The position numbers and the translations under genes were made by a program. From positions 1 to 64,000 of IMG/VR virus record IMGVR_UViG_3300035698_018317: DNA of 64,000 nt; one strand, 5' to 3'. Under the pieces are notes generated by a model that saw nothing but the letters and a program-made list of their open reading frames with translations, was not told the origin of the DNA and did no database searches. Below are positions 2,393 to 31,096 of the stretch, in pieces. Positions within the stretch are counted from its first letter, which is position 1, and every line of letters starts with the position of its first letter.

Positions 2393-2458
2393 ATATATTA
2401 AGGTATTAATTAGCATGTACAGGGATTACTTTACTAATTAGCATGTACAAGATAGTGC

Positions 2459-3100: not shown

Positions 3101-3112
3101 CCCAGCCCAGCC

Positions 3113-3146: not shown

Positions 3147-3547
3147 TGACGTAGTGACGTACCATGGTATGTTGCTACCTATATATGTAAAGGTATTGAT
3201 ACGATGCACCCGAAAAAAAACCACGCCACACTAAAACATAATTTAAAATTAAAAAATTATTTTCAAAAAAGTATGGCACCCACCCCCCTACCCCCCCCTC
3301 CCCCACAATAACGCACCTCTGTCTTAGTTTTGGGCCGTGGGGAAATTCGCATACATGTTACATAATTGATAACATATCAACTTTTGGGGTTTTGTATAGG
3401 GGTTAAAAAATATACACCGAATAAGGTCCAAAAAATCGGCGGGGAGTTTTGCCATATCTACATAACTTTTTTGTCAGAAATTGTTGTTTTTCCGTATAGT
3501 GTTGATATAATCCACTAATCAACTGTTAACCCAAAAGGAATAAGATT

Positions 3548-8307: not shown

Positions 8308-8333
8308 TTTATTACCTTTCAAAATATCCTAGT

Positions 8334-8973: not shown

Positions 8974-8975
8974 AA

Positions 8976-10162: not shown

Positions 10163-10166
10163 TTTT

Positions 10167-11267: not shown

Positions 11268-11284
11268 TTTTTTAATTCCTTCTG

Positions 11285-13232: not shown

Positions 13233-13265
13233 GTTATTTCCTTTCTTAATTATCATCATGTCAAG

Positions 13266-13294
13266 AATATACAGTATGATAAAATAAAAAGCAA
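13266..13294 (-). promoter_or_regulatory. Sigma70-like promoter for the cascade operon
   Basis: Minus strand TTGCTT-17 nt-TATATT between array 2 and cas8e. Confidence 0.5.
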
Positions 13295-13341
13295 GAGAAA
13301 TCCCATATTGTTTTTATTTGAAAAACATATTTTTTAGAAAC

Positions 13342-13740
13342 TTAACACCCCTACGAATGTAGGGAAAACAAAAAAAAGAAGAAGGAATTTCTCCCACGAT
13401 AAGGGACACCCCTACGTTTGTAGGGAAAACTTCTCTAAAAATTTACGAGCATCAGCAACTAGCGGGACACCCCTACGCATGTAGGGAAAACCAGCCGCAG
13501 AGAGATTCCAGAGCGTTCAGTTAGGGGCACCCCTACGCATGTAGGGAAAACGCTAGGTCAGTTCTTCGGGGCCACGTCGCACGAAAGGAACACCCCTACG
13601 TATGTAGGGAAAACCTTTCTGAGTTGCAGATTCGGTCGTGACAACGTTAGGGACACCCCTACGCATGTAGGGAAAACAAGCAATAGATAAAGCATTGAGC
13701 GAAGCTCAATGAGGGACACCCCTACGCATGTAGGGAAAAC
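13342..13740 (-). CRISPR. CRISPR array 2: 7 repeats, 6 spacers, between cas3 and cas8e
   Basis: Same repeat as array 1. Plus-strand starts at 13342, 13403, 13464, 13524, 13587, 13650 and 13713; spacers 32-35 nt. Confidence 0.97.
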
Positions 13741-13773
13741 TATAACATTTAGTAGTAGAGTAATATGTTGTGT

Positions 13774-16368
13774 TTAGTATTTTTTTAGTCTTTTGAGTTG
13801 TAGTCCATTTTCTAAATCATATTTGGCTTCGAAATTTGCTCGTTTTAAATAATTATTTTCATCTAGAATCAAAAGTCCGCAATATCTAAGTGGTGTGCGT
13901 TCCCACTCTTCTCGTATTGTTTTTTGGAAATAATTAAAGTAAGGGTTTCCAATAATTGGACATTGACTTTTTTGTAATAGTTCTATTTCTTTTTTATTTG
14001 GTATTTTTGTTAAATCGGGTGCAAGTATTTTCCTTTTTGGGTCTAAGTACCACCTTTTATCCCCTTGTTTATAGAATAAAATGACCACTTTCATTGCTGA
14101 AACAATATTTCTAGTGGATAGTTTATTCTCTTTTTCTTGTTTCTTAGAAGGATTTATGTTTAAATCATTATCTTCTTTTAAAACTATACTATTTGCTAAG
14201 TTTTCTTCTTTAACTTCTTTTTTTTCTAATTTGTCATGAGCTTTATTATAAGTTTCTTGTTCTTTTTTTGTAAGTTTTTCAAATGGTTTATACACATATT
14301 CAATTAATTCTTCAACCATATCTGGGATTTTTAATTGGGTCTTATTATGCAGTATATCATAAGTTCTTTGCATAGTATAAGAATCATAGACATAATTTTC
14401 TAGCACACCATCTTCATCGAATTCATAAACGACCCCTATTCTTGGAGAACGAAGCCCTAATGGTCGATTTATGATAAAGCGATGATTCCTGCCGCCTCGT
14501 TGTAACAATAAGTCAATTGGGCATAGAAATGTTAACATATAATCGAAATCTACATTAAGACTTTGTTCTATTATCTGAGTTCCTACTAAAATGGATATGA
14601 AAGGTCTTTTAGTACCATCTTTTCCATAATCACTAAGAACTTCTTGTGTTAATTTATCTTTATCTTCATCTCTAAATCGTGCATGAATTAATTTACGATG
14701 AATATCTGGGACCATTTTAGCTAGTAATTTATTTATTCTTTGTGCTTGTTTCACTGTGTTACAGACAATAGCTAGACATCCTCCATTTTTTATTTTTTTC
14801 AGAACATGTCCCAATAATTCATAATATTGTTGAACTACAATACCATTTTTTATTTTAAAATTAGGGTTTATATAAAAATGGTCTAATTTAATTGTTTTAG
14901 TTTTTTCAGGAGGTAATTTTTTAACAATTGTTTTATTTCCAGAAACTACACATACCCTAGGGTATGGAACGTCTTCTTTTAATTCGCCACCATAAGCTTC
15001 AACAAATTCTTTTTTCATTTGTTTTGTTAAGGTGGCAGATAGCATAATGACTGAACATCTTAGATTTTTAAGTTCTTTTAACAATCTTTTAATTAAGACT
15101 TGCATATAAGTGTCATAAGCGTGTATTTCATCAAAAATTACTACTTTATTTACTAGTCCATATAAACGGAGGAAGAAGTATTTTACAGGGACGACACCAA
15201 ACAGAGCTTGGTCTATTGTGCTATCACCAAACTGTGAGAAAAACTTACGCTTTCCACTATTGAACCATTCAAATGGGGAGACAGTATCTTTTGTGTCTAT
15301 TTTTTTATACCATTCATGAGCATTAGCATTGCCATGTCCTATTTGGAAATTTGCCTCTCCATCTGTTATATTTTCTAAATAGTTAACTGTTCTATCTACC
15401 ATGGCATTTGTAGTTGCTTGAGTTGGCATAAGAATATGCATCCCACGATGTCCAACATTTGTCATTAACTTATCTGAGGCATAGAAGCCCACTTCTGTCT
15501 TTCCCTGCCCCGTACTCATTTCGACAATCAAAAGAGATGGTTCTTTTAACTTATCTGCAATTTCTATAATTGTTTTTTGTGATTCATATGGAGTTATATT
15601 CGGGAACATTTCCTCAAAGCTTAAATCTTTAATAGGACATAAATCCATTTTGATATTATCTAATGCAAATTTAGCCTTTTGAGGAAGGTCTTTTACATAT
15701 TCTTGCCATGTTGTTTCTTCCCCTGCAAAGGGGAAGAAATTTTCATCGGAAGCAATCCAATCGGAGAGAGAAAGTAATCCTGAAAAGAAGAAATAAAAGT
15801 GTTGAGGCAACTTTGCTTTCTTCCATATTTTTGACGGAATTGGGAACACCTTTTGAATCACATCTATTGCTAATTCTTGTTGTTCTTTCCACTTATCATC
15901 TTTTAAACATTTAAAGAAAAATCTTCCATCTTGTTTTCTAGGTTTTGGGAGAACTGAGTATCGCCCATGATGACCACCAAGAAGGGAACAAAGTGTATCA
16001 GGCAATTTTCCATTCATTATTTGTTTAGAAAATACTTCATGTCGGAAATGTGGTTTGTTCTTTCCATCTAGACCAAAAAAGTTATACCCATCATCTTGTA
16101 ACGGCTTATAAGCTTCAGATTGAATAGCAAAATTTGGTGTTATTTTACCAATATCATGATATGGAACTATTCCAACTACAAATTGTATTGCTTCATCTTT
16201 AGTTAATCCCAATGAATTAGCCATATATTCTAATTCTTCATCAGGCAGTATCCTAAGAAGAATTTCTTTAGCAATAAAACCCGAATCTAACATATGAAAT
16301 AAAGCAGGATGTGTTTTCTTTGTTGCTCTGTCAAATTTACCCCAAATTTTATAATCTATTTTATTCAT
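13774..16368 (-). CDS. cas3: Cas3 HD nuclease-helicase
   Basis: HDIGK, HHG, SDWIASD, STGQGKTE, DEIH, SATL and QRGGR.HR; start at 16368 overlaps the upstream stop (TGATG). Confidence 0.95.
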   Translation of the reverse strand: MNKIDYKIWGKFDRATKKTHPALFHMLDSGFIAKEILLRILPDEELEYMANSLGLTKDEAIQFVVGIVPYHDIGKITPNFAIQSEAYKPLQDDGYNFFGLDGKNKPHFRHEVFSKQIMNGKLPDTLCSLLGGHHGRYSVLPKPRKQDGRFFFKCLKDDKWKEQQELAIDVIQKVFPIPSKIWKKAKLPQHFYFFFSGLLSLSDWIASDENFFPFAGEETTWQEYVKDLPQKAKFALDNIKMDLCPIKDLSFEEMFPNITPYESQKTIIEIADKLKEPSLLIVEMSTGQGKTEVGFYASDKLMTNVGHRGMHILMPTQATTNAMVDRTVNYLENITDGEANFQIGHGNANAHEWYKKIDTKDTVSPFEWFNSGKRKFFSQFGDSTIDQALFGVVPVKYFFLRLYGLVNKVVIFDEIHAYDTYMQVLIKRLLKELKNLRCSVIMLSATLTKQMKKEFVEAYGGELKEDVPYPRVCVVSGNKTIVKKLPPEKTKTIKLDHFYINPNFKIKNGIVVQQYYELLGHVLKKIKNGGCLAIVCNTVKQAQRINKLLAKMVPDIHRKLIHARFRDEDKDKLTQEVLSDYGKDGTKRPFISILVGTQIIEQSLNVDFDYMLTFLCPIDLLLQRGGRNHRFIINRPLGLRSPRIGVVYEFDEDGVLENYVYDSYTMQRTYDILHNKTQLKIPDMVEELIEYVYKPFEKLTKKEQETYNKAHDKLEKKEVKEENLANSIVLKEDNDLNINPSKKQEKENKLSTRNIVSAMKVVILFYKQGDKRWYLDPKRKILAPDLTKIPNKKEIELLQKSQCPIIGNPYFNYFQKTIREEWERTPLRYCGLLILDENNYLKRANFEAKYDLENGLQLKRLKKY

Positions 16369-16685
16369 CACCCACCAATGCCCATGTTGTTCTTGTAAGG
16401 CCATATGATACGGCCAGATTGTAAGATATCCCACACCATTTTTTTCCATACTTTTCTTATATGGATATGAAATTCTTCAGATGTTACTAATTTTTTTTCA
16501 ATAAGTTGGAATCCCAATTCAGAATCATCAACACCCATTCTATTAAGAGCTTCCCACAAATATCCTACTATTTTATCAACTGTTCTATATTTCTTTCTAA
16601 TATCTTTATCATGCATTGCGACTTCTGCATGTTCGAATATTAGTTCGGCTGCTTCGCACACACGTTCTGATAATTCTGTACACAT
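16368..16685 (-). CDS. Small helical protein whose stop overlaps the cas3 start; paralog of 16691-16981
   Basis: Starts MCTELSERVCEAAELIFEH. Confidence 0.75.
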   Translation of the reverse strand: MCTELSERVCEAAELIFEHAEVAMHDKDIRKKYRTVDKIVGYLWEALNRMGVDDSELGFQLIEKKLVTSEEFHIHIRKVWKKMVWDILQSGRIIWPYKNNMGIGG

Positions 16686-16690
16686 TTATT

Positions 16691-16981
16691 TTACCTTTTA
16701 ATAGCGCCAGTTCGGATAATTGTCCACACCATTTGTTTCCACACAGTCTTTAAAGATTTTGCTCTATCACGGAAGTGTATCTCTGTCACAAGATTATCAT
16801 TAATGAGTTGCATCCCAAATTCGGTATCGTCTATACCAATGTTTAGAAGAACATCCCACAAATATTCTTCTACTTTAAGCTTTGTTTTGTAATAATGATT
16901 TGCATTATGTAAGGCGGCATCTCTATGTTCAAACACTAACTCAGTTGCTTCAAATACACGTTCTGATAATTCTGTACACAT
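16691..16981 (-). CDS. Small helical protein, paralog of 16368-16685
   Basis: Starts MCTELSERVFEATELVFEH; AAAGGAA SD. Confidence 0.75.
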   Translation of the reverse strand: MCTELSERVFEATELVFEHRDAALHNANHYYKTKLKVEEYLWDVLLNIGIDDTEFGMQLINDNLVTEIHFRDRAKSLKTVWKQMVWTIIRTGAIKR

Positions 16982-18537: not shown

Positions 18538-19200
18538 TTATCTTTCTGAGGTGATTTTTAAATAACGTTTAAGTCTAATTTGTTTATTTTTTATTATATT
18601 TTGTTGTACGGCCTCTAGTTCTTGAAGTTGTTTTCCTGTAGTGTCATCTCGTTCGGCAAGATTTTTTCTAATTTTATTTAAAGCTTGCGTGATACGGGCA
18701 GAAACATTTGTAACGTGGATGCCTCTTCGTTCGGCCATTACACATCTTTTTTCTTCATCTAAAAATCGTTCTCTAAGCAATTGTTTTTCTATACTTGAGA
18801 GTTCTTTAGCGACATGTGCCATTGTTTCTTCAAAATGACATGTTCGTTGATATGGGCTAATCTTTTTATCTTCGAAATGGCTTCTTCGTTGATAAGAATC
18901 TTCGTTGTGGTACGAGATGTGATGAAGATAGCTGTTTGGCGACCGCATTTTAAATTCAGTTCTGAGTATATCGTAAGCTAGGAAATAGCCTTTAGAAACG
19001 ATATATCCCATAACATTTTTGCTTCGTTGGGCATCGTAGTATTTTTTATATGCTAATACGATTCCCAAATCTGCTGCGGAGCGTAAATCATTTAGGTGTA
19101 GGTAAGCGAAGCATGGCGTCTGTCGCAGTTTTTTGACGACATAATTGAACAACTTTGTCCAATCTTCGTCGGTAGTAGGTTGCGTTTGCACAGCTATCAT
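18538..19200 (-). CDS. Sigma70-family RNA polymerase sigma factor
   Basis: Region-2-like DLRSAADLGIVLAYKKY and region-4 HTH LSSIEKQLLRERF...MAERRGIHVTNVSARITQALNKIRK. Confidence 0.75.
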   Translation of the reverse strand: MIAVQTQPTTDEDWTKLFNYVVKKLRQTPCFAYLHLNDLRSAADLGIVLAYKKYYDAQRSKNVMGYIVSKGYFLAYDILRTEFKMRSPNSYLHHISYHNEDSYQRRSHFEDKKISPYQRTCHFEETMAHVAKELSSIEKQLLRERFLDEEKRCVMAERRGIHVTNVSARITQALNKIRKNLAERDDTTGKQLQELEAVQQNIIKNKQIRLKRYLKITSER

Positions 19201-19202: not shown

Positions 19203-19901
19203 TTACCTATCATTTTGCATATACTCCCTTGGTACATTCTCGGTTAACCAGACACCGTTTGTAGAAAGGTAGAATACGAATCCATCTGAAGACATTTTAC
19301 CAGAATCCACAGAAATAACAATAGGTTTTCCCCTTCTTTTCCCGACTTGTATTGCTGTGTCCTTATCTACAGACAGATGCACATGATGTCGTTTCATCTT
19401 TTTTAACCCATCATGTTGTATAATATCCCAATTTTTTTGTACGGTGCCATGATATAGCGTATCAGGAGGGGTTTGTGCCTCATAATTCAGATTTATTTTG
19501 ACACTATGGCCTTGAGACGCCCGAATTTGAGATTTATCTTCATTGAATTCGAATCGCTTTTTGTTGTTATGTTCTACAATTTCTTCCAGTTCATCCATAG
19601 AGATGTGGCAACCGGACAAAACTGCTCCTACATCTGCCCAACCTTGTTCATCGAGGGTGAGGTTGATGGTTTCTGGTTTATGCCTAAGAACTAGGCTAAG
19701 AAATTTACTTTGATTTACCATCTGCATCCCTCTTAACGGTGTCAATCCGCCACAGCAATCAATTCTTGGGTCTGGGTTACGGGAGTATTCTTCATTTTCA
19801 CTCCAGCCGCAGCTAAAGCAACCCCAAGGGCCGTGTATCACGCCGACACCTACATCGACCACATCTTGTTCACATTTACAATTACATTCTGGACATTTCA
19901 T
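19203..19901 (-). CDS. kptA: RNA 2'-phosphotransferase KptA/Tpt1 with an N-terminal Cys-rich extension
   Basis: SKFLSLVLRH, RASQGHS, LYHGT, RHHVHLS and NGVWLT; possible internal start at 19721. Confidence 0.92.
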   Translation of the reverse strand: MKCPECNCKCEQDVVDVGVGVIHGPWGCFSCGWSENEEYSRNPDPRIDCCGGLTPLRGMQMVNQSKFLSLVLRHKPETINLTLDEQGWADVGAVLSGCHISMDELEEIVEHNNKKRFEFNEDKSQIRASQGHSVKINLNYEAQTPPDTLYHGTVQKNWDIIQHDGLKKMKRHHVHLSVDKDTAIQVGKRRGKPIVISVDSGKMSSDGFVFYLSTNGVWLTENVPREYMQNDR

Positions 19902-19939
19902 ATGAATGATTATAGTGCTTTTAGAGGTATTTGTAAATC

Positions 19940-20365
19940 TTATTTAAGATATTTTTTGATAAGGTCACTGGAATTTTTTAGAAGAGCGGTTAAACCGAAG
20001 TGTTTTGGAGAAACTTGTTTTAATTCTGCGAGTGTTGCCCACTTAGCTTTATCTGTTTCGAAGTTTAGTTTTGGTTTGAATTCATTTACTAAGCCGATAA
20101 AGTTATGGAATTTAAGGTGTTTATCTTCATAAACATAGGCTGGGAAGAGTTCCATATCGCCTTTAAAGCCTGTTTCTTCCCTAAATTCACGTAGGGCTTC
20201 CTTTTTCATATCACTTGATTCAGCTTTCCCGCCGAAGGATGCCCATGTTCCCGGTTCAGGTCCGTCTTGCCCTCTGAGTCCAACAAGGATTTTTCCCTCC
20301 GGTGAAATAGCTAGTATTCCGGCCCCGGTGATACGATTTATATATTTTTTGAATTCAAGTAGCAC
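19940..20365 (-). CDS. Nudix hydrolase
   Basis: GTWASFGGKAE...ALREFREETG; GTG start. Confidence 0.88.
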   Translation of the reverse strand: MLLEFKKYINRITGAGILAISPEGKILVGLRGQDGPEPGTWASFGGKAESSDMKKEALREFREETGFKGDMELFPAYVYEDKHLKFHNFIGLVNEFKPKLNFETDKAKWATLAELKQVSPKHFGLTALLKNSSDLIKKYLK

Positions 20366-20382
20366 ATCTTATGTATCTTAGT

Positions 20383-20652
20383 TCATCTGTTTTTTACGGC
20401 ATTTCTTTCATAGCAGAATTTACAATTACCTTTATGGGTAAGTCCACCCGGAGACCCATTTCCAAGTTTTTCTCGGTATAAGACATATTCACAGTCTTCT
20501 ACAATAATGACCACGCATACACCTTTTGGATTCTGCTTGATGTCTGATTTACTTGTGCTTTCAGTGCATCCAGATAATCCAGACAATAAACCTGTCATAA
20601 TAAATACGACTAACGCTGTTTCTATTCCAAATTTTTTAATTCTTTTCAACAT
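20383..20652 (-). CDS. Putative lipoprotein
   Basis: Signal peptide with lipobox LSGC. Confidence 0.6.
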   Translation of the reverse strand: MLKRIKKFGIETALVVFIMTGLLSGLSGCTESTSKSDIKQNPKGVCVVIIVEDCEYVLYREKLGNGSPGGLTHKGNCKFCYERNAVKNR

Positions 20653-20653
20653 G

Positions 20654-21355
20654 TTAACTCCTAATAACTTTTTCTATATTTTCTCGTGCTTTAGCTTCGA
20701 ATTTTTCTTTAAACAAATCTGTTCTGAATATGCTTTTTCTCGCTAGAAGAGTTTGGAAGAACTCTATTCTTCCTTTTTCGTATTCTTCTTCCCCGACAAC
20801 GGGAACGAATTCTTCTTTAACTAATTGGTCAGCATACAGGAAGACTTCTTCTTCTCGTGCAAAATGGGACAGGTCAAGGTCCATTACTAAGTCAGACCCT
20901 TCTGGCCAAGTATTATCAGTATCTTTCATAAAATCTTTTGTGTATAGAATAATGCATTGTGCGTGAGAACCAACATGTGGCGGATTAGTTTCACCCACAA
21001 GAGCTTTCATAAACAAAGAACTTCTTTCTTCGGAATCTTCCCTTAGTACTTCATATATGGAATCATGAAACCAGATAGCAAGTTGCTGTGCTTTTGATAG
21101 TTTTATATTATGTTTTTCTGCCCATTCGAACATACTAAGCACATGTACTAGCGTATGGTATTTCCGGTCAGTACCTAGCATATACTTAAGAACGGTGTTG
21201 GTAATAGCACGAGGATATGGTGTCTGTAACCCTAAATCATGAAGAAGTGTAGACAGACCCCAAAACATATCTATAGCTCTACGGTAATCGTCCACCCAAA
21301 TAAGATTATTCTTAAATGACTCGGACATTTTGATATAATCGAAATCTTCGTACAT
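20654..21355 (-). CDS. HD-superfamily metal-dependent phosphohydrolase (COG4339-like)
   Basis: RKYHTLVH, AIWFHDSIY, DLDLS and EYEKGRIEF. Confidence 0.75.
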   Translation of the reverse strand: MYEDFDYIKMSESFKNNLIWVDDYRRAIDMFWGLSTLLHDLGLQTPYPRAITNTVLKYMLGTDRKYHTLVHVLSMFEWAEKHNIKLSKAQQLAIWFHDSIYEVLREDSEERSSLFMKALVGETNPPHVGSHAQCIILYTKDFMKDTDNTWPEGSDLVMDLDLSHFAREEEVFLYADQLVKEEFVPVVGEEEYEKGRIEFFQTLLARKSIFRTDLFKEKFEAKARENIEKVIRS

Positions 21356-21358: not shown

Positions 21359-21949
21359 TTACCTCAATAATTCGACAAAGCAGATTAGCCCATCACCATG
21401 TTGGGCTGACGGTGGTGAATAACGATTGTTTGTTATTAATCTGGATTTAAACATTTTACCCTTTTCAAGTTTTATGTAATCAGTCCAATAAAAGATGTGG
21501 TATATTTTATCTTTATTTGTTTTAACAAAAGCTAAATTACCAAATACGTATTTTTCTTTAACGACAAAAGTTGTATATTTTTTTTCTTCTTTCTTTTCTA
21601 CCTTTTCTACTACTTTCTCTACTTTCTTTTCCACTTTCTTTTCTTCTACTGCTTTTTCTACTATTACTTCTATTTTTGCTTCTGCTTCTACTTTTTCTAC
21701 TATTACTTCTATTTCTGCTTCTTCTTCTACTTCTGCCACTACTTCTATTTTTGCTTCTGCTACTGCTACTTCTTCCACTACTTCTGTTTCCACTTCTGCT
21801 TCTTCCACTACTTCTATTTTTGCTTCTGCTATCTTTTCTGTTTCTGCTACTTCCGGGGCATCAGGAAAACAAACAGTGAAGAAGAAAAACAAAGATGCAA
21901 ACAGGGCAAGGAAACAGAGTGTGGTTAGTGTGATTTTTTTAAGAGTCAT
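21359..21949 (-). CDS. Membrane-anchored protein with a Glu/Val/Ala/Lys-rich repeat stalk
   Basis: N-terminal TM segment, repeated AEAKIEV(V/I)(E/A/V)E, small C-terminal domain. Confidence 0.7.
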   Translation of the reverse strand: MTLKKITLTTLCFLALFASLFFFFTVCFPDAPEVAETEKIAEAKIEVVEEAEVETEVVEEVAVAEAKIEVVAEVEEEAEIEVIVEKVEAEAKIEVIVEKAVEEKKVEKKVEKVVEKVEKKEEKKYTTFVVKEKYVFGNLAFVKTNKDKIYHIFYWTDYIKLEKGKMFKSRLITNNRYSPPSAQHGDGLICFVELLR

Positions 21950-22142: not shown

Positions 22143-22452
22143 TTATTTTCTTCTTCTTCTTCTTTTGTGAATTTTACGAACTCGGATATTTCTACTAATT
22201 TATGTCGCTCAATGATATGCGACCTTAATTTTTTATTATACAATTTAATATGGTAAACATCGAAAGGCTCACCATCTTTATTTTTTCTTCAGTAATTCTG
22301 AATATTTCACCTACGGGATAAGGGTATCCTCTGGGATACGGGAGATTGTTTGTTACACAAACTACTTGTCCAACTTCGTACATTCTTTCTTTTTTGCATC
22401 CTGCCAAAGAAAAAAGAGTGAGAATCAAAATTATTGGTAATATTTTATACAT
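22139..22452 (-). pseudogene. Frameshifted member of the SH3-like lipoprotein array
   Basis: Lipobox LAGC. One extra A in the A6 run at 22281-22286 restores the family C-terminus YHIKLYNKKLRSHII...SEFVK. Confidence 0.7.
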
Positions 22453-22473
22453 TGGTTAGCTCCAATTCGGCAT

Positions 22474-22704
22474 TCATCCTATGATACCATGAGAATACGC
22501 CGCTAACATGGCGGCTTTTTCTTTAATTTCAACTGCCGTTACAGGATTTGGGTCAAAGGCAACGGCTTCTTGTGCTTTCTCGTGCCAATAAGCACGGGTT
22601 GGGTCTTCAAGGCATGACAAGTGTTTGAGAGCGATACTCAAAGCGGTCTCTGGCTCTGAATTCATAGACTCAGAATTAAGTGTATTTGGTTTAAATGGCC
22701 ACAT
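22474..22704 (-). CDS. Unrelated small ORF inserted in the lipoprotein array
   Basis: MWPFKPN..., lacks the family motif. Confidence 0.5.
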   Translation of the reverse strand: MWPFKPNTLNSESMNSEPETALSIALKHLSCLEDPTRAYWHEKAQEAVAFDPNPVTAVEIKEKAAMLAAYSHGIIG

Positions 22705-22709
22705 CTTTT

Positions 22710-23003
22710 TTACCTCGGGTCTGGAATGAGTTGACATAAAACATCTTTTTTATGTCTTATGACTACATGGCCTTTCATTTGGCCGCAGAGAACTTTTATG
22801 TGATAAACAATATCTCTTGTTGAATTATCACATCTTGTGATACGGTGTATTGGGCCTCTCCATTCTTGGTCATCTTTTAAGCAAACAACGTCACCTACTT
22901 GGAAAATCTGTTCTTCATTATTGGATAACTGCTGGTATATTGTGATGCCTATGGCACTAAATACAATGCCAACAATGAGTATAATCACTATTATTTTTCC
23001 CAT
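22710..23003 (-). CDS. SH3-like array member (TM-anchored, no lipobox Cys)
   Basis: FQVGDVVC...GPIHRIT...YHIK...KGHVV...PDPR. Confidence 0.75.
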   Translation of the reverse strand: MGKIIVIILIVGIVFSAIGITIYQQLSNNEEQIFQVGDVVCLKDDQEWRGPIHRITRCDNSTRDIVYHIKVLCGQMKGHVVIRHKKDVLCQLIPDPR

Positions 23004-23004
23004 T

Positions 23005-23283
23005 TTATTTACCCTTTTCTATTTCTATGAATTCACGTATATTACTTAACTGGTTTAGCACGATGACATGCCCTTTTAATTTTGGCTTATACAATTTGAC
23101 ATGATAAGTGAATTTTTTATCGACGTTATGTTCATGTATATCTTTAGTGATTTTGAACACTTCACCAACGGCATAGTCGTCGTCTACGATGCAAACCTTT
23201 TGACCAACTTTGTACATAGGTTCTTGTTTGCATCCTGTCAGAAGAAAAAGGGCTAAAATTAAAATTATGGATGTTTTATACAT
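23005..23283 (-). CDS. SH3-like array lipoprotein
   Basis: Lipobox LTGC; YKVGQKVC; YHVKLY; KGHVIV. Confidence 0.8.
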   Translation of the reverse strand: MYKTSIILILALFLLTGCKQEPMYKVGQKVCIVDDDYAVGEVFKITKDIHEHNVDKKFTYHVKLYKPKLKGHVIVLNQLSNIREFIEIEKGK

Positions 23284-23289
23284 TATATT

Positions 23290-23583
23290 TTACCTTGGGT
23301 CTGGAATGATTTGAAACACTTCATTTGTTTTTTGTCTAAAGACGATATAGCCTTTTCTGTTTTTGTATAAAATTTTCACATGATAAACACAATATGTATC
23401 GGTAAGACCCTTTTCGGTCATTTTTGTACTTTTTGTGACACGAATTATTGGTCCTTGGAGTGTGGGGTTGTCTTTTATACAGACAGTTTCACCTATTGAG
23501 TAAATCTGTTTTTCATCTTTCCCGCATCCAATGACGCAAAACAAGAGAACAAGTATAATCCATATTTTATTCATTTTGTTCAC
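23290..23583 (-). CDS. SH3-like array lipoprotein
   Basis: Lipobox VIGC; YSIGETVC; YHVK; KGYIV; PDPR. Confidence 0.8.
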   Translation of the reverse strand: MNKMNKIWIILVLLFCVIGCGKDEKQIYSIGETVCIKDNPTLQGPIIRVTKSTKMTEKGLTDTYCVYHVKILYKNRKGYIVFRQKTNEVFQIIPDPR

Positions 23584-23855
23584 CTTGGGTCTTCTGAGAA
23601 TTTGTTTATTTCACTTGCCCTTTTTTCATAAATCACACTTCCACCTAAATCCTTTTTGTGAACCGAAACGTAATAAATGAACATTATACGATTGTTACTG
23701 GGGTTGGTTGCTTGTTCTACCTTGTCTATCGTTCCAACCATACTTCCATCTATGATACAGACCTTTTCGCCGACTACGAACTTTTTCTTTTCATCTTTGC
23801 ACCCCACAATACAGAGGGCACAAAGTAGAAGGGGTATAAATAGTAGCTTTTTCAT
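23580..23855 (-). CDS. SH3-like array lipoprotein
   Basis: Lipobox IVGC; FVVGEKVC; EDPR. Confidence 0.8.
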   Translation of the reverse strand: MKKLLFIPLLLCALCIVGCKDEKKKFVVGEKVCIIDGSMVGTIDKVEQATNPSNNRIMFIYYVSVHKKDLGGSVIYEKRASEINKFSEDPR

Positions 23856-23857
23856 AA

Positions 23858-24124
23858 TTATCTTTCTTGTGCTATGAATTCGAATACATCTTCTTCTATC
23901 ATTCTGTATACAGCGTATCCTTTTTCGGGTACTAAAACCTTTACATGGAAGATGCTATATGGGCCTTTTACAATAATGCGTTGGATAGTTCCTACTTCTC
24001 CGGTTCGCAAAACCACTTTATCTCCCTCTTTGAAAATTGCTTCTTTTTTTTTGCAATCTGGGTTATGCCCACATCCCATGAAGAAGCAACAAAGCATCAA
24101 AATGACAATTAGTTTTTTTGGCAT
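23858..24124 (-). CDS. SH3-like array lipoprotein
   Basis: Lipobox FMGC; FKEGDKV; FHVK; VFEF. Confidence 0.8.
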   Translation of the reverse strand: MPKKLIVILMLCCFFMGCGHNPDCKKKEAIFKEGDKVVLRTGEVGTIQRIIVKGPYSIFHVKVLVPEKGYAVYRMIEEDVFEFIAQER

Positions 24125-24131
24125 AGCATCC

Positions 24132-24425
24132 TTATCTTTCTTGTTCTATGAATTCGAGTATATTTTCTTCTGCCATTCGGTGAACAACATATCCTTTTTC
24201 TGTTTTGCTGAAAATTTTTACATGGTAGCTGTAGATGGGTGCATTACAGCCGCCTTTACCTTTCTTTGATACACGATGGATAGTTCCTGTGTCTCCTGTA
24301 ACCCGCAGAGACACTTTATCTCCCACTTTGAAAATTGCTTTATTGTTGCTTGCGCAATTATCGCTATGTTCACATCCCATGAAGAAGCAACAAAGCATCA
24401 GAATGACAATTAGTTTTTTTGGCAT
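24132..24425 (-). CDS. SH3-like array lipoprotein
   Basis: Signal peptide identical in amino acids to that of 23858-24124; FKVGDKV; YHVK; ILEFIEQER. Confidence 0.8.
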   Translation of the reverse strand: MPKKLIVILMLCCFFMGCEHSDNCASNNKAIFKVGDKVSLRVTGDTGTIHRVSKKGKGGCNAPIYSYHVKIFSKTEKGYVVHRMAEENILEFIEQER

Positions 24426-24434
24426 AGATAATCC

Positions 24435-24770
24435 TTATCTTGGTTGTTCTACAAATTCGAATACGTTTGATTCGGGAACTCTGTGTACAACATGTCCTTT
24501 TAAATCTTCATTAAAAACCTTTATATGATAAAGGCTATCTGGACCTTTTGTTATACGAAGAATAGTTCCTATAATATTAGGTCGCATAACAACTTTGTCT
24601 CCGACTTTTAAAATCCCAACTTGTAAAACATATTCTTCTTTAGCCTCTTTAGCTGTCTCAGGAGTATTTGTAGTATCTGTAGTAGTATCTGTAGCTGCAC
24701 ATCCTATTATTAGAGCACAAAGCAATGCCGTCAACATCGGTACAAACATAATATCAATCAGTTTTGACAT
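24435..24770 (-). CDS. SH3-like array lipoprotein
   Basis: Lipobox IIGC; Thr-rich linker; LKVGDKV; YHIK; KGHVV; VFEFVEQPR. Confidence 0.8.
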   Translation of the reverse strand: MSKLIDIMFVPMLTALLCALIIGCAATDTTTDTTNTPETAKEAKEEYVLQVGILKVGDKVVMRPNIIGTILRITKGPDSLYHIKVFNEDLKGHVVHRVPESNVFEFVEQPR

Positions 24771-24778
24771 AGGTTATC

Positions 24779-25078
24779 CTACTTTGGATTTTCGATGAAT
24801 TCTAATATGTCTTTTTCTTTTATTTTGTATACGATATGGCCTTTTTTCTTTTCATCGTAAACTTTTACAGAATACACATATGAAGGCCACGTTTCTGTGA
24901 CCTTACAGATAACTCCAACTATGGTTGGTTTTTCTATGATAACTCGTGCTATGGAAGTGGGTTTATAAATAACCACTTTTTCTCCAACCTTGTAAATGGC
25001 TGGCGTGGACTCAAGAGCATCGCCACATCCTACTATGAAGCAACAAAGCATGAGAATAGAAATCAGTTTTTTTGACAT
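24779..25078 (-). CDS. SH3-like array lipoprotein
   Basis: Lipobox IVGC; YKVGEKV; YSVK; KGHIV; ILEFIENPK. Confidence 0.8.
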   Translation of the reverse strand: MSKKLISILMLCCFIVGCGDALESTPAIYKVGEKVVIYKPTSIARVIIEKPTIVGVICKVTETWPSYVYSVKVYDEKKKGHIVYKIKEKDILEFIENPK

Positions 25079-26224: not shown

Positions 26225-26288
26225 ATTTTATTTCTTTTGTTGGTGGACTCGCAGGCACCGGACTATATAATTGTATAAGGATTATACC

Positions 26289-27164
26289 ATGAATGAATTT
26301 ACAAAACAATGCCCATCTTGCGGAAAATTAATTAATTGCAAAACAAAATATTACTTAAAAGAGTCAAAAAGAAAAAATAGGAATTGCCAATCATGTGCAG
26401 CAAAAGAAAGAATAAAAAAATACGGAAACAATGATAGTTTTAATAAAATATCAAAAAAAGGAGCACAATCCGGCGAGCTAAACCCATTTTATGGAAAAAA
26501 ACATTCTGACGACGCTAGAAAAAAAATAAGTGAAAATACCAACCGAGAATGGATGAATACAGCAGAATATAAAGCAAAGGTGTCTAAGCAATGTTCTGGT
26601 AAGGGCAATCCAATGTATGGAAAAATATGTTATCAAATTTGGTTGGAAAAATATGGCAAAGAAGAAGCAGATAGACGTAAAGAAGCAAGAAGACAGAAAG
26701 CTTCCAAAAGTCTTTCTGGAGCTAATAATCCGATGTACGGCAAACCATCACCACAGGGGTCAGGTAATGGTTGGAATGGATGGTATAAAGATTGGTTTTT
26801 CAGAAGTTTGTTAGAATTGTCCTATGTTGTAAATGTATTGGAAAAACAAAATAAAAAATGGGTAAGTGCTGAATATATTAAAATACCATATGAATCATAT
26901 GATGGACATCAAAGGACTTACCGACCAGATTTTTTAGTCGATAGTCATTTGCTTATAGAAATTAAGCCCGCTAAACTTGTTAATACACGTTTGGTGCAAA
27001 TTAAAAAACAAGCGGCTATCCAATATGCAAAACAAAAAGACATGGATTATCAAATTATATCACCACAAATGATATCTAAGTCTAATTTGATACAATTGCA
27101 TCAGGATGGACAATTTAAATTTACTGAAAAATATGAAGAGAAGTTCATTCAATATTATAGATAA
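26289..27164 (+). mobile_element. Free-standing putative homing endonuclease (Zn finger + NUMOD3 repeats + TnsA-like PD-(D/E)xK domain)
   Basis: CPSC..CQSC, NPFYGKKHS, NPMYGK twice, YRPDF..IEIKP. Confidence 0.75.
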
Positions 27165-28762: not shown

Positions 28763-29524
28763 TTAACGTTTGTTACGCCAAACGGAGTCTAGGGTAACAG
28801 GCATATGTACGATATTTGCTTCTGCACCGGGATAAGGCGGATAAACTTGATGGATGATAAATTGTTTTGTTTTTCCGGCTTTGAGTAATTCTCGTGCCAC
28901 ATTTTTAAACGCCTCAATGTGGTCTTTTCTATCATCCCATATTTCAATGATATCAAATCCTTTGTAATTTGCTACAAGTGTATTGACAACATATGTTTTA
29001 TGAGCAAGCGTATTGGAATCAGGTTTTTCTGTGCCTTTTTTCGATGTTCTTGTAGGATAACCTTTTTCGGTCATAAAGTCTCCCGTATAGTACTCTTGAT
29101 GAGAATTGGGAGACTTTTCTTCTGGGTGAACCATATCTTCTTTTGAGTCAACGGCTGATTGGAATTTTTCCCGAGATTTTTCATTGGCAGAACCAATGAC
29201 TCTTCGGCCATACAATTCTTGTTGTCTTAGGACGTTTCTAACGTGGGCAGAAGCAACGCCTCTTCTCCCGGTAAGAAGAATAGCTACAGTATTAGGGTCG
29301 TTCTTTGCTTCTTTAAAAGCATCAACCACTTCTTGATTTACGCTTCCATCATAGAATGGTGCCGTAAGGGAGTCTTTACTTCCCCACCAATCTTTACCGC
29401 TCCATCCGTGTTGAGGGTCATCTGTTTTTGGTCTTTCTGGTACATTAGCAATTGTACCATCAAAGTCGAAAACAGATAGACGACGAGTAGGAGCTTCTTC
29501 CACATATTGTCGAAATTCGCCCAT
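28763..29524 (-). CDS. HAD phosphatase, Swiss-Army-Knife RNA-repair-like family
   Basis: VFDFDGT, DPNTVAILLTGR and IEIWDDRKDH. Confidence 0.75.
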   Translation of the reverse strand: MGEFRQYVEEAPTRRLSVFDFDGTIANVPERPKTDDPQHGWSGKDWWGSKDSLTAPFYDGSVNQEVVDAFKEAKNDPNTVAILLTGRRGVASAHVRNVLRQQELYGRRVIGSANEKSREKFQSAVDSKEDMVHPEEKSPNSHQEYYTGDFMTEKGYPTRTSKKGTEKPDSNTLAHKTYVVNTLVANYKGFDIIEIWDDRKDHIEAFKNVARELLKAGKTKQFIIHQVYPPYPGAEANIVHMPVTLDSVWRNKR

Positions 29525-29539: not shown

Positions 29540-31096
29540 TTACTTTAACGTTTTTTTGAATGCTTCAGCTTCTAAGCCACTGATGATTTCACCACGTTGA
29601 TGCGGTGGTACTTTACCAGAACCATTGCACTCTTCGCAACCCATTCCGTTACATTTTTTACAGGTATCTCCACCTGATGCTTCTATATCACCCCATTTTA
29701 CTGAGGGTTGATGACCTGCGAAGGCTTTAACTCGTTTTGCCCACCAGCCACCTCTACGGTTTCTTTTGGTGCCGGGAGCGTTGAACATTTCTACCCAATC
29801 TCTAATTTGTTGGGCTGATAAACCAGTTCCTTGTTTTCCTTTAAAGAACTGACTAACTTGGTTGGGTTGGAAATTCTTTAATTTAAGCAGAAACAGGACG
29901 GCTCGACGTTCTTCTATTTGCCAACCAGTCGCTTTTGATTCTTTCCCAACTTGTCGCAGGGAGCTTAATGTTTCAGCTACTTTTTCAATAGGATTATACC
30001 TAAGAAGCCAAGCAAGAGCCAGAGGTTTATCATTTTTATCAGAAAATTCTGCTGGAACTCCTTTAGCTTGAGCAAAATTGACTCCGGGGAATATAACCGG
30101 AAGTAATTTTGTCCTATCATAAATAGTAAGATATTTCTTTGAATCTATGTCTGGGTCTAATAGACCTTTCAAAAATTCATCTCTGATTCTTTCAAGAGAG
30201 ATACGTTCTGGGAGATTCATGAAATTTGGAATTGCCTTGGCAATTTCCGGGTCAAGTTTATCTCCTTGTCCAAATCGGCATTGGAATCGGATTGCTCTCA
30301 TAATACGAACAGGGTCTTCCTCAAATCTTTCTTGAGCTTTTCCAACTGTTTTTACCTTACCATGTTTCAAGTCATGAAGACCTCTTCCAGTTGGGTCATA
30401 TAACTTTTTATTTTCTCCATCTGCTTTAGTCAATTCAATATAAAGAGCATTAATTGTCAAATCTCTTCTACTGGCATCTTCCTTCGGATTATCCACAAAA
30501 TCAACTTCTGATTGGCCATTTTCTGTACCTTGGCCGACCTTTGCATCTTTACGGAAGGTTGCGATTTCAAATTCTTCTTTTTCTACCACAGCGCTAATAA
30601 CAAAGACTTTTTTCTCTTCACTATTATCTCTTCCTTTTATGAACCAAAGTTTTGTATCACCCTTTTGGGCATCTTCTATTTTTCTTGTTTGTCCATCTTC
30701 ATCATAGAATTTTGAAGGAAGGTTTAGTTCATCTCCTTCTTTTCCGCTTTTATCACCAGTTCTTTTGAATCCGGCTGATGCGAGGATGGTTGCCACTTGA
30801 GCGGGAGTAGCATTGGTGGCTAAATCATAATCTTTAACAGTTTTACCTTTGATGAAGTCACGCACGGGACCACCTACCAAGTAAAGTGTTTTCTTGGGCA
30901 TGGCTACGTCTTTACCGCTGGTATCTTTTTGAAGTACGATGCTTCCGCTATTCAGAAACGCTCTAACTATTGGGCGTAATTTTTGTGGAGGTATAAATCC
31001 TTTGTCAAGAGGGGCCGCAGCAGATTCGGCTTTCCAATCTTTGCTACCTTTTTCCTCTTTCAACATCACGTATTTTTTAAAGCTTCTTGTATTCAT
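29540..31096 (-). CDS. Class II tRNA nucleotidyltransferase (CCA-adding/poly(A) polymerase family)
   Basis: LVGGPVRD..KDYDLAT, EIATFR, RRDLTINA, EDPVRIMRAIRF and SLERIRDE; C-terminal CxxC..CxxC. Confidence 0.9.
   Translation of the reverse strand: MNTRSFKKYVMLKEEKGSKDWKAESAAAPLDKGFIPPQKLRPIVRAFLNSGSIVLQKDTSGKDVAMPKKTLYLVGGPVRDFIKGKTVKDYDLATNATPAQVATILASAGFKRTGDKSGKEGDELNLPSKFYDEDGQTRKIEDAQKGDTKLWFIKGRDNSEEKKVFVISAVVEKEEFEIATFRKDAKVGQGTENGQSEVDFVDNPKEDASRRDLTINALYIELTKADGENKKLYDPTGRGLHDLKHGKVKTVGKAQERFEEDPVRIMRAIRFQCRFGQGDKLDPEIAKAIPNFMNLPERISLERIRDEFLKGLLDPDIDSKKYLTIYDRTKLLPVIFPGVNFAQAKGVPAEFSDKNDKPLALAWLLRYNPIEKVAETLSSLRQVGKESKATGWQIEERRAVLFLLKLKNFQPNQVSQFFKGKQGTGLSAQQIRDWVEMFNAPGTKRNRRGGWWAKRVKAFAGHQPSVKWGDIEASGGDTCKKCNGMGCEECNGSGKVPPHQRGEIISGLEAEAFKKTLK

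What the first reader, a model, noticed from the sequence alone, without database searches (positions are those of the whole stretch)
19203..21355. KptA-Nudix-HD cluster: NAD/ADP-ribose-linked nucleic-acid end processing
Seen: kptA, a Nudix gene and an HD phosphohydrolase gene lie within 2.2 kb on one strand. Known: Tpt1/KptA uses NAD+ to remove RNA 2'-phosphates, releasing ADP-ribose cyclic phosphate, and can ADP-ribosylate 5'-phosphate ends; many Nudix enzymes hydrolyse ADP-ribose or NAD caps. Inference: a writer/eraser or repair/clean-up set countering RNA-damaging or NAD-based host defences. No RNA ligase was recognised in the window.
Basis: partly seen in the sequence, partly recalled or inferred. 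Interest (0 to 1): 0.6.

Follow-up and report, generated by a model that had tools for sequence, protein, structure and literature searches.

The report
Phage KptA–Nudix–HD RNA-end gene cluster
A huge salt-lake phage carries an intact NAD-dependent RNA 2'-phosphotransferase gene beside a small Nudix hydrolase and a phosphodiesterase-like HD enzyme; it looks like a local variant of the NAD-dependent RNA-repair sets already described in jumbo phages, but the three genes are linked only in this phage's close kin.

Summary
On the minus strand lie an HD-type gene (20654-21355), a small lipoprotein-like ORF (20383-20652), a Nudix gene (19940-20365) and kptA (19203-19901).

- **KptA:** it reaches NCBIfam's equivalog cut-off and keeps the R-H-R-R tetrad.
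- **Nudix:** it is a minimal MutT/RppH-like enzyme, not a recognisable ADP-ribose pyrophosphatase.
- **HD protein:** it matches no Pfam model. It belongs to a very large uncharacterised family (12,362 clusters). Its confident model most resembles class-I cyclic-nucleotide phosphodiesterases (Z 13-16).
- **Genome:** the window is the first 64 kb of a 225-kb, about 44% complete virus record.
- **Linkage:** the trio and its order recur in three related contigs. They are absent from more distant kin, which keep only HD. None of 189 other KptA or HD loci links KptA to HD.
- **Other KptA loci:** these carry NADAR, Macro, 2H, metallophosphoesterase and Thg1 genes. None of NADAR, Macro or 2H was found in this record.
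- **Repair context:** an RNA ligase, a small kinase and 11 tRNAs lie elsewhere in the record. A HAD "Swiss-army-knife" phosphatase and a CCA-type nucleotidyltransferase lie 7-10 kb upstream.

Best reading (about 0.4): a clade-specific KptA RNA-repair set in which HD and Nudix replace 2H and Macro/NADAR. Nearly as likely (about 0.33): unrelated accessory genes in a variable island.

The parts
20654..21355 (-). HD-superfamily metal-dependent phosphoesterase (233 aa) with a fold like class-I phosphodiesterases. It belongs to a large family without a Pfam model.
   Evidence: PHROG 19425, E 9.5e-30. The family has 12,362 representative clusters. H67, H71, H97, D98, T139, D159, D161 and E182 are invariant. 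The AF2 model has pLDDT 93. VIA-align gives Z 13.2-16.3 to PDE1/2/3/4/5/7/8/9 catalytic domains, against 10.8 or less for small HD hydrolases.
20383..20652 (-). 89-aa lipoprotein-like ORF with a lipobox-type LSGC motif, lying inside the cluster. It is probably an accessory insert and not part of the chemistry.
   Evidence: sequence; PHROG 19356, unknown function. The same slot is empty in L003 and holds a DUF3293/SAM-lyase-like gene in L002.
19940..20365 (-). Minimal Nudix hydrolase (141 aa) of the MutT/RppH-like branch.
   Evidence: PF00293, E 7e-10. The best solved relatives by sequence are BdRppH 3EES (5e-5), NudG and MutT. R59, E60, E63, E64 and G66 of the Nudix box are invariant.
19909..19937 (-). 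Promoter-like site (TTTACA-17-TATAAT, 11 of 12) in the 38-nt gap between Nudix and the kptA ORF.
   Evidence: Consensus match only; the total number of sites in the region is not above that of shuffles.
19722..19901 (-). 60-codon Cys-rich (zinc-ribbon-like) segment, in frame with and upstream of the KptA domain. It is either a fusion or an upstream ORF that has lost its stop.
   Evidence: PHROG 6115 on residues 2-40, E 6.8e-5. It is absent from the KptAs of L002 and L003 and from 75 other phage KptAs. No Shine-Dalgarno sequence precedes ATG 19901, whereas GAGGG lies 6 nt before the internal ATG at 19721.
19203..19721 (-). Tpt1/KptA RNA 2'-phosphotransferase domain (residues 61-232 of the ORF).
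   Evidence: PF01885 and NF002014 above their cut-offs. R73, H74, R127 and R171 are invariant in alignment A2.
18538..19200 (-). Sigma-70-like factor gene, 2 nt after kptA. It is kept downstream of kptA in L003.
   Evidence: TIGR02937 at 2.8e-5 and PHROG 1740. L003 has a Sigma70_r4 gene in the same place.
28763..29524 (-). HAD 'Swiss-army-knife' RNA-repair-type phosphatase in the same co-directional region.
   Evidence: PF10307, E 3e-16. It is syntenic in L002-L004 and in L010.
29540..31096 (-). PolyA_pol/CCA-type tRNA nucleotidyltransferase (518 aa).
   Evidence: PF01743, E 8.7e-27, and PF12627.

Best explanation
This is a clade-specific variant of the NAD+-dependent, KptA-centred RNA-repair sets of large phages.

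- KptA transfers an RNA 2'-phosphate to NAD+, giving a clean 2'-OH, nicotinamide and ADP-ribose 1'',2''-cyclic phosphate. The protein is shown to be intact here; the reaction is established chemistry of the family.
- The phosphodiesterase-like HD enzyme is inferred to open a ribose cyclic phosphate. Its substrate would be either the 2',3'-cyclic end of cleaved RNA, which creates KptA's substrate, or KptA's by-product ADP-ribose cyclic phosphate.
- The Nudix enzyme is inferred to split the ADP-ribose derivative into AMP and a ribose phosphate.

HD and Nudix would thus fill the roles that 2H, Macro and NADAR proteins hold beside kptA in other phages. The ligase, kinase, HAD phosphatase and CCA-type nucleotidyltransferase encoded elsewhere in the genome would complete repair of tRNAs cut by host anticodon nucleases.
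For: - KptA reaches the equivalog cut-off and has an invariant R-H-R-R tetrad (tetrad and two-step reaction as in PMC8120803).
- The genes are packed with gaps of 1-38 nt on one strand. The order HD-(variable slot)-Nudix-KptA-sigma is kept in L002, L003 and L004, while flanking and intervening accessory genes vary.
- Elsewhere, 14 of 80 phage KptA loci carry NADAR, Macro or 2H within 6 kb. Some carry the whole set together with metallophosphoesterase and Thg1.
- This 225-kb record has no Macro, NADAR or 2H.
- The HD model resembles cyclic-nucleotide phosphodiesterases over its whole length, Z 13-16. It keeps an H-x3-H, HD, D pattern.
- HD-family genes sit next to RNA ligase genes in Rhodococcus phage NiceHouse and near one in L006.
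- HAD_SAK_1 and a CCA-type nucleotidyltransferase lie 7-10 kb upstream.
- An RNA ligase, a second Nudix, an NMNAT-like gene, an AAA_33 kinase and 11 tRNAs lie elsewhere in the record.
- KptA-Nudix linkage has precedents: L037 (KptA directly followed by an NMNAT-Nudix-kinase protein) and a KptA-Nudix fusion in Bodo saltans virus (PMC9503650).
Against: - No KptA-HD linkage exists outside this clade: 0 of 80 KptA loci, 0 of 29 viral and 0 of 80 bacterial HD loci. Five of 50 KptA-bearing records hold an HD gene, and never adjacent.
- More distant kin (L010, L104, L105) keep the helicase and HD genes (L010 also HAD_SAK_1) but lack Nudix and KptA.
- The Nudix is MutT/RppH-like. Its closest outside homologues are not KptA-linked.
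- In other phages, HD-family genes sit beside ribonucleotide reductase or NAD-salvage genes.
- The only ligase is 108 kb away. By its domains (N-terminal OB plus PF09414) it looks like a nick-sealing ligase. From my own knowledge, such ligases are not known to leave a 2'-phosphate.
- The record is only about 44% complete, so the absence of 2H, Macro and NADAR is not proven.
- A low-depth contig variant may lack Nudix altogether.
Confidence: 0.4

Rival explanations
1. This is a neighbourhood by descent, not a system. KptA, Nudix and HD are three independently acting accessory enzymes that happen to sit together in a variable, accessory-gene-rich stretch of this phage clade. HD would be a nucleotide or cyclic-nucleotide phosphoesterase, Nudix a house-cleaning or NTP/RNA pyrophosphohydrolase, and only KptA would deal with RNA 2'-phosphates.
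For: - Each family occurs widely without the others.
- HD predates the Nudix-KptA pair in the lineage.
- The slot between HD and Nudix holds different unrelated inserts: a lipoprotein here, a SAM-lyase-like DUF3293 gene in L002, and nothing in L003.
- Upstream lies an array of about ten paralogous small lipoprotein genes whose number varies between relatives.
- A promoter-like site separates Nudix from kptA.
- Nudix genes near HD-family genes occur at about the rate expected by chance: 3 of 29 and 3 of 80 loci.
Against: - The trio stays contiguous in three diverged contigs (68-85% identity by tblastn) while its surroundings change.
- All catalytic motifs are kept.
- The functional 'syntax' parallels full KptA islands elsewhere, which combine KptA with a cyclic phosphodiesterase, an ADP-ribose-derivative hydrolase, a phosphatase and a nucleotidyltransferase.
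- This record lacks the usual partners.
Confidence: 0.33
2. This is a 5'-end capping writer/eraser set. The RppH-like Nudix makes 5'-monophosphate RNA ends, or removes caps. KptA ADP-ribosylates 5'-phosphate ends of RNA or DNA to protect or mark them. HD trims the products.
For: - Bacterial, archaeal and fungal Tpt1 enzymes ADP-ribosylate 5'-phosphorylated RNA in vitro (PMC8120803).
- The best solved relative of the Nudix by sequence is an RNA pyrophosphohydrolase, BdRppH 3EES.
- The extra zinc-ribbon-like N-terminus on KptA could add nucleic-acid binding.
Against: - The Nudix-RppH similarity is weak (E 5e-5) and no better than that to NudG or MutT.
- No physiological role for 5'-capping by Tpt1 is known.
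- The known erasers are macrodomains, and none is present.
- The zinc ribbon is unique to this genome and may not be translated with KptA.
Confidence: 0.1
3. This is a counter to NAD+- or nucleotide-signal-based host immunity. The PDE-like HD degrades cyclic nucleotide or cyclic ADP-ribose-type signals, and the Nudix hydrolyses ADP-ribose-type products. KptA would be incidental.
For: - The HD fold is closest to cyclic-nucleotide phosphodiesterases.
- The phage invests in NAD metabolism elsewhere, with a Nudix gene beside an NMNAT-like gene.
- The literature proposes such roles for phage Nudix, 2H and Macro enzymes (PMC7824862).
Against: - The HD family is abundant in bacterial chromosomes of many phyla without defence context.
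- No sensor or sponge genes are nearby.
- No substrate evidence exists.
Confidence: 0.1

Closest known systems
KptA-based NAD+-dependent RNA-repair gene sets of jumbo phages (Iyer, Burroughs, Anantharaman, Aravind: PMC7824862, 2021; PMC9503650, 2022; RNA-repair 'syntax' of Burroughs and Aravind 2016, cited there)
   Same: A phage-encoded KptA sits in a very large phage genome that also has an ATP-dependent RNA ligase, a HAD 'Swiss-army-knife' phosphatase, a nucleotidyltransferase, a kinase and tRNAs. A Nudix enzyme beside KptA has been proposed to process ADP-ribose derivatives.
   Different: The usual partners (2H, Macro, NADAR, Thg1, metallophosphoesterase) are absent from the 225 kb available. 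A PDE-like HD protein and a MutT-like Nudix stand beside kptA instead. The linkage is seen only in one narrow clade.
Yeast/plant tRNA-splicing clean-up pathway, described from my own knowledge: Tpt1, then a 2H cyclic phosphodiesterase (Cpd1), then a macrodomain phosphatase (Poa1), then an ADP-ribose Nudix (Ysa1)
   Same: The logic is the same: a 2'-phosphotransferase whose cyclic-phosphate by-product needs a diesterase and further hydrolysis.
   Different: The diesterase here would be an HD metal enzyme rather than a 2H enzyme. There is no macrodomain. The Nudix is not of the ADP-ribose pyrophosphatase type. No ligase known to leave a 2'-phosphate junction was identified.
Class-I cyclic-nucleotide phosphodiesterase catalytic domain (PDE1-PDE10, LmjPDEB1, yeast Pde2)
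   Same: The HD model aligns over 216-226 of 233 residues with Z 13.2-16.3. It shares an H-x3-H, HD, D metal-site pattern; the mapping to PDE residues is from memory and was not tested.
   Different: There is no detectable sequence similarity: no PDEase_I or HD Pfam hit, and no PDB hit by profile. The protein is about 100 residues shorter, and its substrate is unknown.
HD domain of E. coli CCA-adding enzyme, which has 2',3'-cyclic phosphodiesterase, 2'-nucleotidase and phosphatase activities (Yakunin et al. 2004, from my own knowledge)
   Same: It is a precedent for an HD enzyme healing 2',3'-cyclic or 2'-phosphate RNA ends in a tRNA-repair setting.
   Different: It belongs to a different HD subfamily. 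The nearest tRNA-processing enzyme in the fold search reached only Z 7.2.

Membership tests
Tpt1/KptA RNA 2'-phosphotransferase (PF01885; NCBIfam NF002014) | Full-length match to the family model above the curated cut-off | tested here: met
   PF01885: 177.9 bits (cut-off 26), profile positions 3-176 of 177. NF002014: 240.4 bits (cut-off 239).
Tpt1/KptA RNA 2'-phosphotransferase (PF01885; NCBIfam NF002014) | Catalytic Arg-His-Arg-Arg tetrad | tested here: met
   R73, H74, R127 and R171 are invariant in A2, within the LRH, IRxxQGHS and RxxVHL motifs. The tetrad is defined in PMC8120803.
Tpt1/KptA RNA 2'-phosphotransferase (PF01885; NCBIfam NF002014) | NAD+-dependent removal of RNA 2'-phosphate | not testable with these tools
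   Needs an enzyme assay.
Nudix hydrolase superfamily (PF00293) | Nudix domain match and Nudix box GX5EX7REUXEEXGU | tested here: inconclusive
   The domain is above the cut-off (39.5 against 21.1 bits). The REUXEEXGU half is intact and invariant. The first Glu is Asp and the spacer is one residue short.
ADP-ribose pyrophosphatase subfamily of Nudix | Closest similarity to ADPRases, and the downstream Pro marker (Dunn et al. 1999, from memory) | tested here: not met
   The best NCBIfam and PDB relatives are MutT, NudG, RppH and MTH1. Pro lies 8, not about 16, residues after the box. One JGI record names a 72%-identical homologue 'ADP-ribose pyrophosphatase YjhB'; this is an automatic label.
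HD superfamily of metal-dependent phosphohydrolases | H...HD...D metal-binding motif on an all-alpha fold | tested here: met
   H67, H71, H97, D98, D159 and D161 are invariant in 84 sequences. The model is all-helical with pLDDT 93. The fold hits are all HD-superfamily or PDE proteins.
HD superfamily of metal-dependent phosphohydrolases | Match to Pfam HD (PF01966) or any curated HD model | tested here: not met
   No Pfam or NCBIfam hit at E 0.01 for the window protein or for eight family representatives. Only PHROG 19425 matches.
Class-I cyclic-nucleotide phosphodiesterases (PDEase_I) | Sequence membership and cyclic-nucleotide hydrolysis | tested here: not met
   Sequence membership: there is structural resemblance only (Z up to 16.3, 11-15% identity). 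Foldseek gives E 0.03-0.09 and the sequence profile finds no PDB hit. Cyclic-nucleotide hydrolysis was not tested.
KptA-centred phage RNA-repair system | RNA ligase and end-healing enzymes encoded by the same genome | tested here: met
   An RNA ligase (PF09414 plus OB domain) at 127.7-129.0 kb of the record, HAD_SAK_1 at 28763-29524, and AAA_33 kinases at 134.4 and 196 kb. None is adjacent to kptA.
KptA-centred phage RNA-repair system | 2H, Macro or NADAR enzymes for ADP-ribose cyclic phosphate | tested here: not met
   No match in the 225-kb record. The record is about 44% complete, so absence from the phage is unproven.
KptA-centred phage RNA-repair system | Gene neighbourhood conserved across unrelated lineages | tested here: not met
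   The trio occurs only in L002-L004, the phage's close kin. It is absent from L010, L104, L105 and from 189 other loci.

The most novel reading that the evidence does not exclude
The large, structurally unsolved HD family found here (12,362 clusters, no Pfam model, fold like class-I phosphodiesterases) would be a ribose-cyclic-phosphate diesterase. In this phage clade it would have displaced the 2H enzymes. KptA, HD and Nudix would then form a self-contained pathway that removes RNA 2'-phosphates and converts ADP-ribose 1'',2''-cyclic phosphate into AMP and a ribose bisphosphate, which could re-enter PRPP and NAD synthesis.
Probability: 0.15. Interest if true: 0.65.

Novelty: new variant of a known kind. 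Interest (0 to 1): 0.4.

Why it matters
What KptA/Tpt1 does in bacteria and phages is still unknown, because no bacterial pathway is known to make internal RNA 2'-phosphates. A phage clade in which kptA travels with a phosphodiesterase-like HD enzyme and a Nudix, instead of the usual 2H, Macro and NADAR partners, offers a compact three-enzyme set that can be tested in vitro. It would also give a first functional handle on a very large uncharacterised HD family. If the genes prove independent, the finding reduces to one more jumbo-phage kptA, which is already described.

Tried and rejected
- **DNA similarity to deposited phages:** none found.
- **Rfam and tRNA scans of the window:** nothing found.
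- **First HD fold, with 8 sequences:** too poor to use, pLDDT 57. Refolding with 84 sequences worked.
- **Sequence profiles of the HD family against PDB:** only spurious PCNA and CpcJ rows.
- **Fusion partners of HD-family proteins:** the longer members (288-762 aa) gave no Pfam domains.
- **Conserved neighbours of the HD family in 80 bacterial loci:** only lineage synteny (Mesorhizobium) and generic GGDEF regulators.
- **G041, the one KptA phage with an HD gene 7 kb away:** the genes between are unrelated (HTH, DUF7168), and KptA pairs with Thg1 there.
- **Idea that the two Nudix and sigma-like loci of the genome are a duplication:** rejected. The sigma-like proteins are unrelated by BLASTP and the Nudix proteins share only the Nudix-box region.
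- **Other phage KptAs reported as matching the N-terminal extension (L020, L098):** they are ordinary 178-aa proteins.
- **DUF3293 in L002 as a possible NAD enzyme:** rejected. It groups with phage SAM-lyase-like families.
- **RNA sequencing runs:** none hold the locus, so co-transcription could not be tested.
Full report
**What the window is.** The window is the first 64 kb of a 225,284-bp IMG/VR virus record. CheckV rates the record about 44% complete, so this is a very large phage. Its GC content is 36.8%, a simple gene call gives about 309 genes, and there is no sign of a non-standard code. Near-identical sequence occurs in salt-lake metagenomes from many studies, and none of those runs is RNA. 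Deposited phages show no DNA similarity.

**The observation.** It is confirmed at the stated coordinates, and all genes are on the minus strand.
- kptA (19203-19901, 232 aa) matches PF01885 end to end (E 2.6e-52). It just clears NCBIfam's equivalog cut-off (240.4 against 239 bits) and matches PHROG 5470.
- Aligned with five other phage KptAs, the catalytic Arg-His-Arg-Arg residues (R73, H74, R127, R171) are invariant. The tetrad and the two-step reaction yielding ADP-ribose 1'',2''-cyclic phosphate are as reviewed in PMC8120803.
- The Nudix gene (19940-20365, 141 aa) passes PF00293.
- The 'HD' gene (20654-21355, 233 aa) matches no Pfam or NCBIfam model. It does match PHROG 19425 'phosphohydrolase' at 9.5e-30.
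- An 89-aa lipoprotein-like ORF lies between HD and Nudix. A sigma-like gene follows kptA after 2 nt.
- The gaps are 1, 17, 38 and 2 nt. The 38-nt gap holds an 11-of-12 sigma-70-like match.
- With random gene order, such a trio within four genes would arise with probability about 4e-4 (post hoc).

**KptA's unusual N-terminus.** The ORF begins 60 codons upstream of where the KptAs of relatives begin. The extra part is Cys-rich and matches a small phage protein family (PHROG 6115). No Shine-Dalgarno sequence precedes the first ATG. A GAGGG lies 6 nt before the internal ATG that corresponds to the start used in relatives. Seventy-five other phage KptAs are mostly 175-204 aa and have no such domain. 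Whether a fusion protein is made remains open.

**The Nudix.** Its best curated and solved relatives are MutT, NudG, RppH (BdRppH 3EES, E 5e-5) and MTH1, not ADP-ribose pyrophosphatases. The catalytic REUXEEXGU half of the Nudix box is intact. The first Glu is Asp and the spacer is one residue short. Homologues at 38-50% identity lie in other phages between terminase and portal genes, or beside a NadR-type kinase. None lies beside KptA or HD. The substrate cannot be read from the sequence.

**The HD protein.**
- A profile search of 1.8 billion representatives found 12,362 clusters, 8,097 of them at E 1e-10 or better. None of the members I tested has a Pfam domain.
- In 84 members, H67, H71, H97, D98, T139, D159, D161 and E182 are invariant.
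- With that alignment, AlphaFold2 gave pLDDT 93 and pTM 0.91.
- Foldseek found only weak matches, all class-I cyclic-nucleotide phosphodiesterases.
- The exhaustive structural search put 17 such phosphodiesterases on top: Z 13.2-16.3, 216-226 of 233 residues aligned. The small HD hydrolases came well below (2pq7 at 10.8, YpgQ 9.1, SpoT 8.5, YedJ 8.4).
- No family member has a solved structure by sequence.
- I read this as a metal-dependent phosphoesterase with a phosphodiesterase-like architecture. Its substrate is unknown.

**Do the genes co-occur in relatives?** They do in close kin.
- L002, L003 and L004 come from three different samples. By tblastn, HD is 68-72% identical, Nudix 74-77% and KptA 77-85%.
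- All three keep the order HD, Nudix, KptA. L003 also keeps the sigma-like gene. The wider synteny with the helicase, SprT, HSP20, HAD_SAK_1 and PolyA_pol genes is also kept.
- The surroundings vary. The lipoprotein array upstream has about ten copies here, four in L002 and none in L003. The slot between HD and Nudix holds a lipoprotein here, a DUF3293/SAM-lyase-like gene in L002 and nothing in L003.

They do not co-occur in more distant kin.
- L010, L104 and L105 have the helicase at 52-54% identity (and HAD_SAK_1 at 46% in L010). They keep the helicase and HD genes but have no Nudix or KptA.
- The same holds for L005 and L006, whose HD is about 36% identical.

They do not co-occur elsewhere either.
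- None of 80 IMG/VR KptA loci has an HD-family gene within 6 kb, and only one to three have a Nudix.
- None of 29 viral and 80 bacterial HD loci has KptA. Nudix genes lie near HD at about the chance rate.
- Among 50 whole KptA-bearing records, five hold an HD-family gene, never adjacent. In the closest case (7 kb) the genes between are unrelated, and KptA pairs with Thg1.
- Among cultured phages, the organism names listed for the 98 KptA-bearing and 20 HD-bearing records do not overlap apart from different 'uncultured' records; three further organism names in the KptA tally were not displayed.

**What normally stands beside phage kptA.** I clustered the neighbours in the 80 loci and annotated representatives. 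This gave NADAR (12 loci), metallophosphoesterase (10), Thg1 (8), 2H/LigT (7) and Macro (6). Fourteen loci have at least one of NADAR, Macro or 2H, and several loci carry the whole set. This matches the published picture of KptA-based, NAD+-dependent RNA repair in jumbo phages, with ADP-ribose cyclic phosphate processed by 2H, Macro, NADAR and Nudix enzymes (PMC7824862, PMC9503650). In cultured phages such as phiCD211, Ea35-70 and AD1, kptA stands among unannotated genes.

**What this genome has and lacks.** The 225 kb contain no Macro, NADAR, 2H, RtcB, T4-type Rnl1 or NAPRTase gene. They do contain the following.
- One RNA ligase (PF09414 with an N-terminal OB domain) at 127.7-129.0 kb. It is followed by a second Nudix, an NMNAT-like gene and another sigma-like gene.
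- Small AAA_33 kinases at 134.4 and 196 kb.
- Eleven tRNA genes, for Ser, Leu, Tyr and Phe only.
- Within the window, a HAD 'Swiss-army-knife' phosphatase and a CCA-type nucleotidyltransferase 7-10 kb upstream of the trio.

**Interpretation.** The parts match the modular 'syntax' of RNA-repair systems but use different families. A CCA-type nucleotidyltransferase stands where others have Thg1, HAD_SAK_1 where others have a metallophosphoesterase, a PDE-like HD where others have 2H, and a Nudix where others have Macro or NADAR.

My best explanation (confidence about 0.4) is a clade-specific KptA repair set. HD would open a ribose cyclic phosphate, either on the RNA end or on KptA's by-product. 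The Nudix would split the ADP-ribose derivative. The integrity of KptA is shown here; the roles of HD and Nudix are inferred.

HD-family genes beside RNA ligase genes in Rhodococcus phage NiceHouse, and near one in L006, give modest independent support. HD genes beside ribonucleotide reductase or NMNAT-Nudix genes elsewhere point instead to nucleotide metabolism.

The main rival (about 0.33) is that the three are unrelated accessory genes kept together only by descent in a variable island. A 5'-phospho-ADP-ribose capping set and a counter to nucleotide-signal immunity remain possible, at about 0.1 each.

**A loose end.** Low-depth contigs in two salt-lake runs join position 19851 to 20664 and so skip 812 nt, which covers the 89-aa ORF and Nudix. 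The 24 nt between the two sides read, on the minus strand, as the first four codons of the Cys-rich ORF. This may be a co-occurring strain in which HD directly abuts kptA. The flank is only 31 nt, and I could not verify it.

**Verdict.** The general idea is already published. What is new is the particular pairing, which is restricted to a narrow clade, and the recognition that the 'HD' protein belongs to a huge uncharacterised family with a phosphodiesterase-like fold. This is a new variant of a known kind, with interest 0.4.

Noticed in passing
window 8322-16449: A phage-encoded type I-E CRISPR-Cas interference module lies on the minus strand: Cas6e 8976-9545, Cas5 9542-10228, Cas7 10167-11267, Cse2 11285-11815, Cse1 11808-13259 and Cas3 13774-16449. 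Beside it is a CRISPR array of about 10 repeats (core GGGACACCCCTACGCATGTAGGGAAAAC, spacing 60-62 nt) at 8322-8913. No cas1 or cas2 was recognised nearby.
   Followed up: partly
window 22225-25078: An array of about ten paralogous small (75-111 aa) genes lies between the RecD-like helicase gene and the HD gene. Most carry a signal peptide and a lipobox-like Cys, then a conserved 'VGxxVC...G.I.R/K' core. The copy number differs in relatives: four in L002 and none in L003.
   Followed up: partly
window 1-4000: This stretch has 48% GC against about 36% elsewhere and a strong A-over-T skew. It has only short ORFs overlapping on both strands, and no Rfam or tRNA hit. Its nature is unknown.
   Followed up: no
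window 16368-16981: Two tandem paralogous small genes (105 and 96 aa, both starting MCTELSERV) lie directly downstream of cas3. The one tested (16691-16981) has no Pfam match.
   Followed up: no
window 6979-7099: Two tandem 61-nt copies, 85% identical, lie in a gene-poor stretch upstream of the CRISPR array.
   Followed up: no
G000 127.7-134.8 kb (L103:5689-12817), outside the window: A second RNA/NAD locus holds an RNA ligase with an N-terminal OB domain (447 aa), a Nudix (141 aa), an NMNAT-like cytidylyltransferase-fold protein (241 aa), a sigma-like protein and a 153-aa AAA_33 kinase.
   Followed up: partly
G000 171.8-180.4 kb, outside the window: Eleven tRNA genes are restricted to Ser (5), Leu (3), Tyr (2) and Phe (1). 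These are almost only the long-variable-arm tRNAs.
   Followed up: no
window 19851-20664: Low-depth contigs in two salt-lake runs skip 812 nt (the 89-aa ORF plus Nudix). They join the 3' end of HD to the start of the Cys-rich/kptA ORF. This may be a strain variant without the Nudix.
   Followed up: no
window 26271-27164: A homing-endonuclease-like gene (NUMOD3 repeats plus a TnsA-like nuclease domain) lies on the opposite strand between the helicase and SprT-like genes.
   Followed up: no
window 21359-21949: A 196-aa protein has an N-terminal membrane anchor and a long acidic E/V/K-rich repeat region directly upstream of HD. Contig depth peaks and small indels fall in its repeat (21502-21796), suggesting length variation or cross-mapping.
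   Followed up: no
L030, L054, L062-L064 (IMG/VR): These are compact 'full' KptA islands, with NADAR, Macro, 2H, metallophosphoesterase and (except in L054) Thg1 within 6 kb of kptA. L037 has kptA directly followed by an NMNAT-Nudix-AAA_28 protein.
   Followed up: partly
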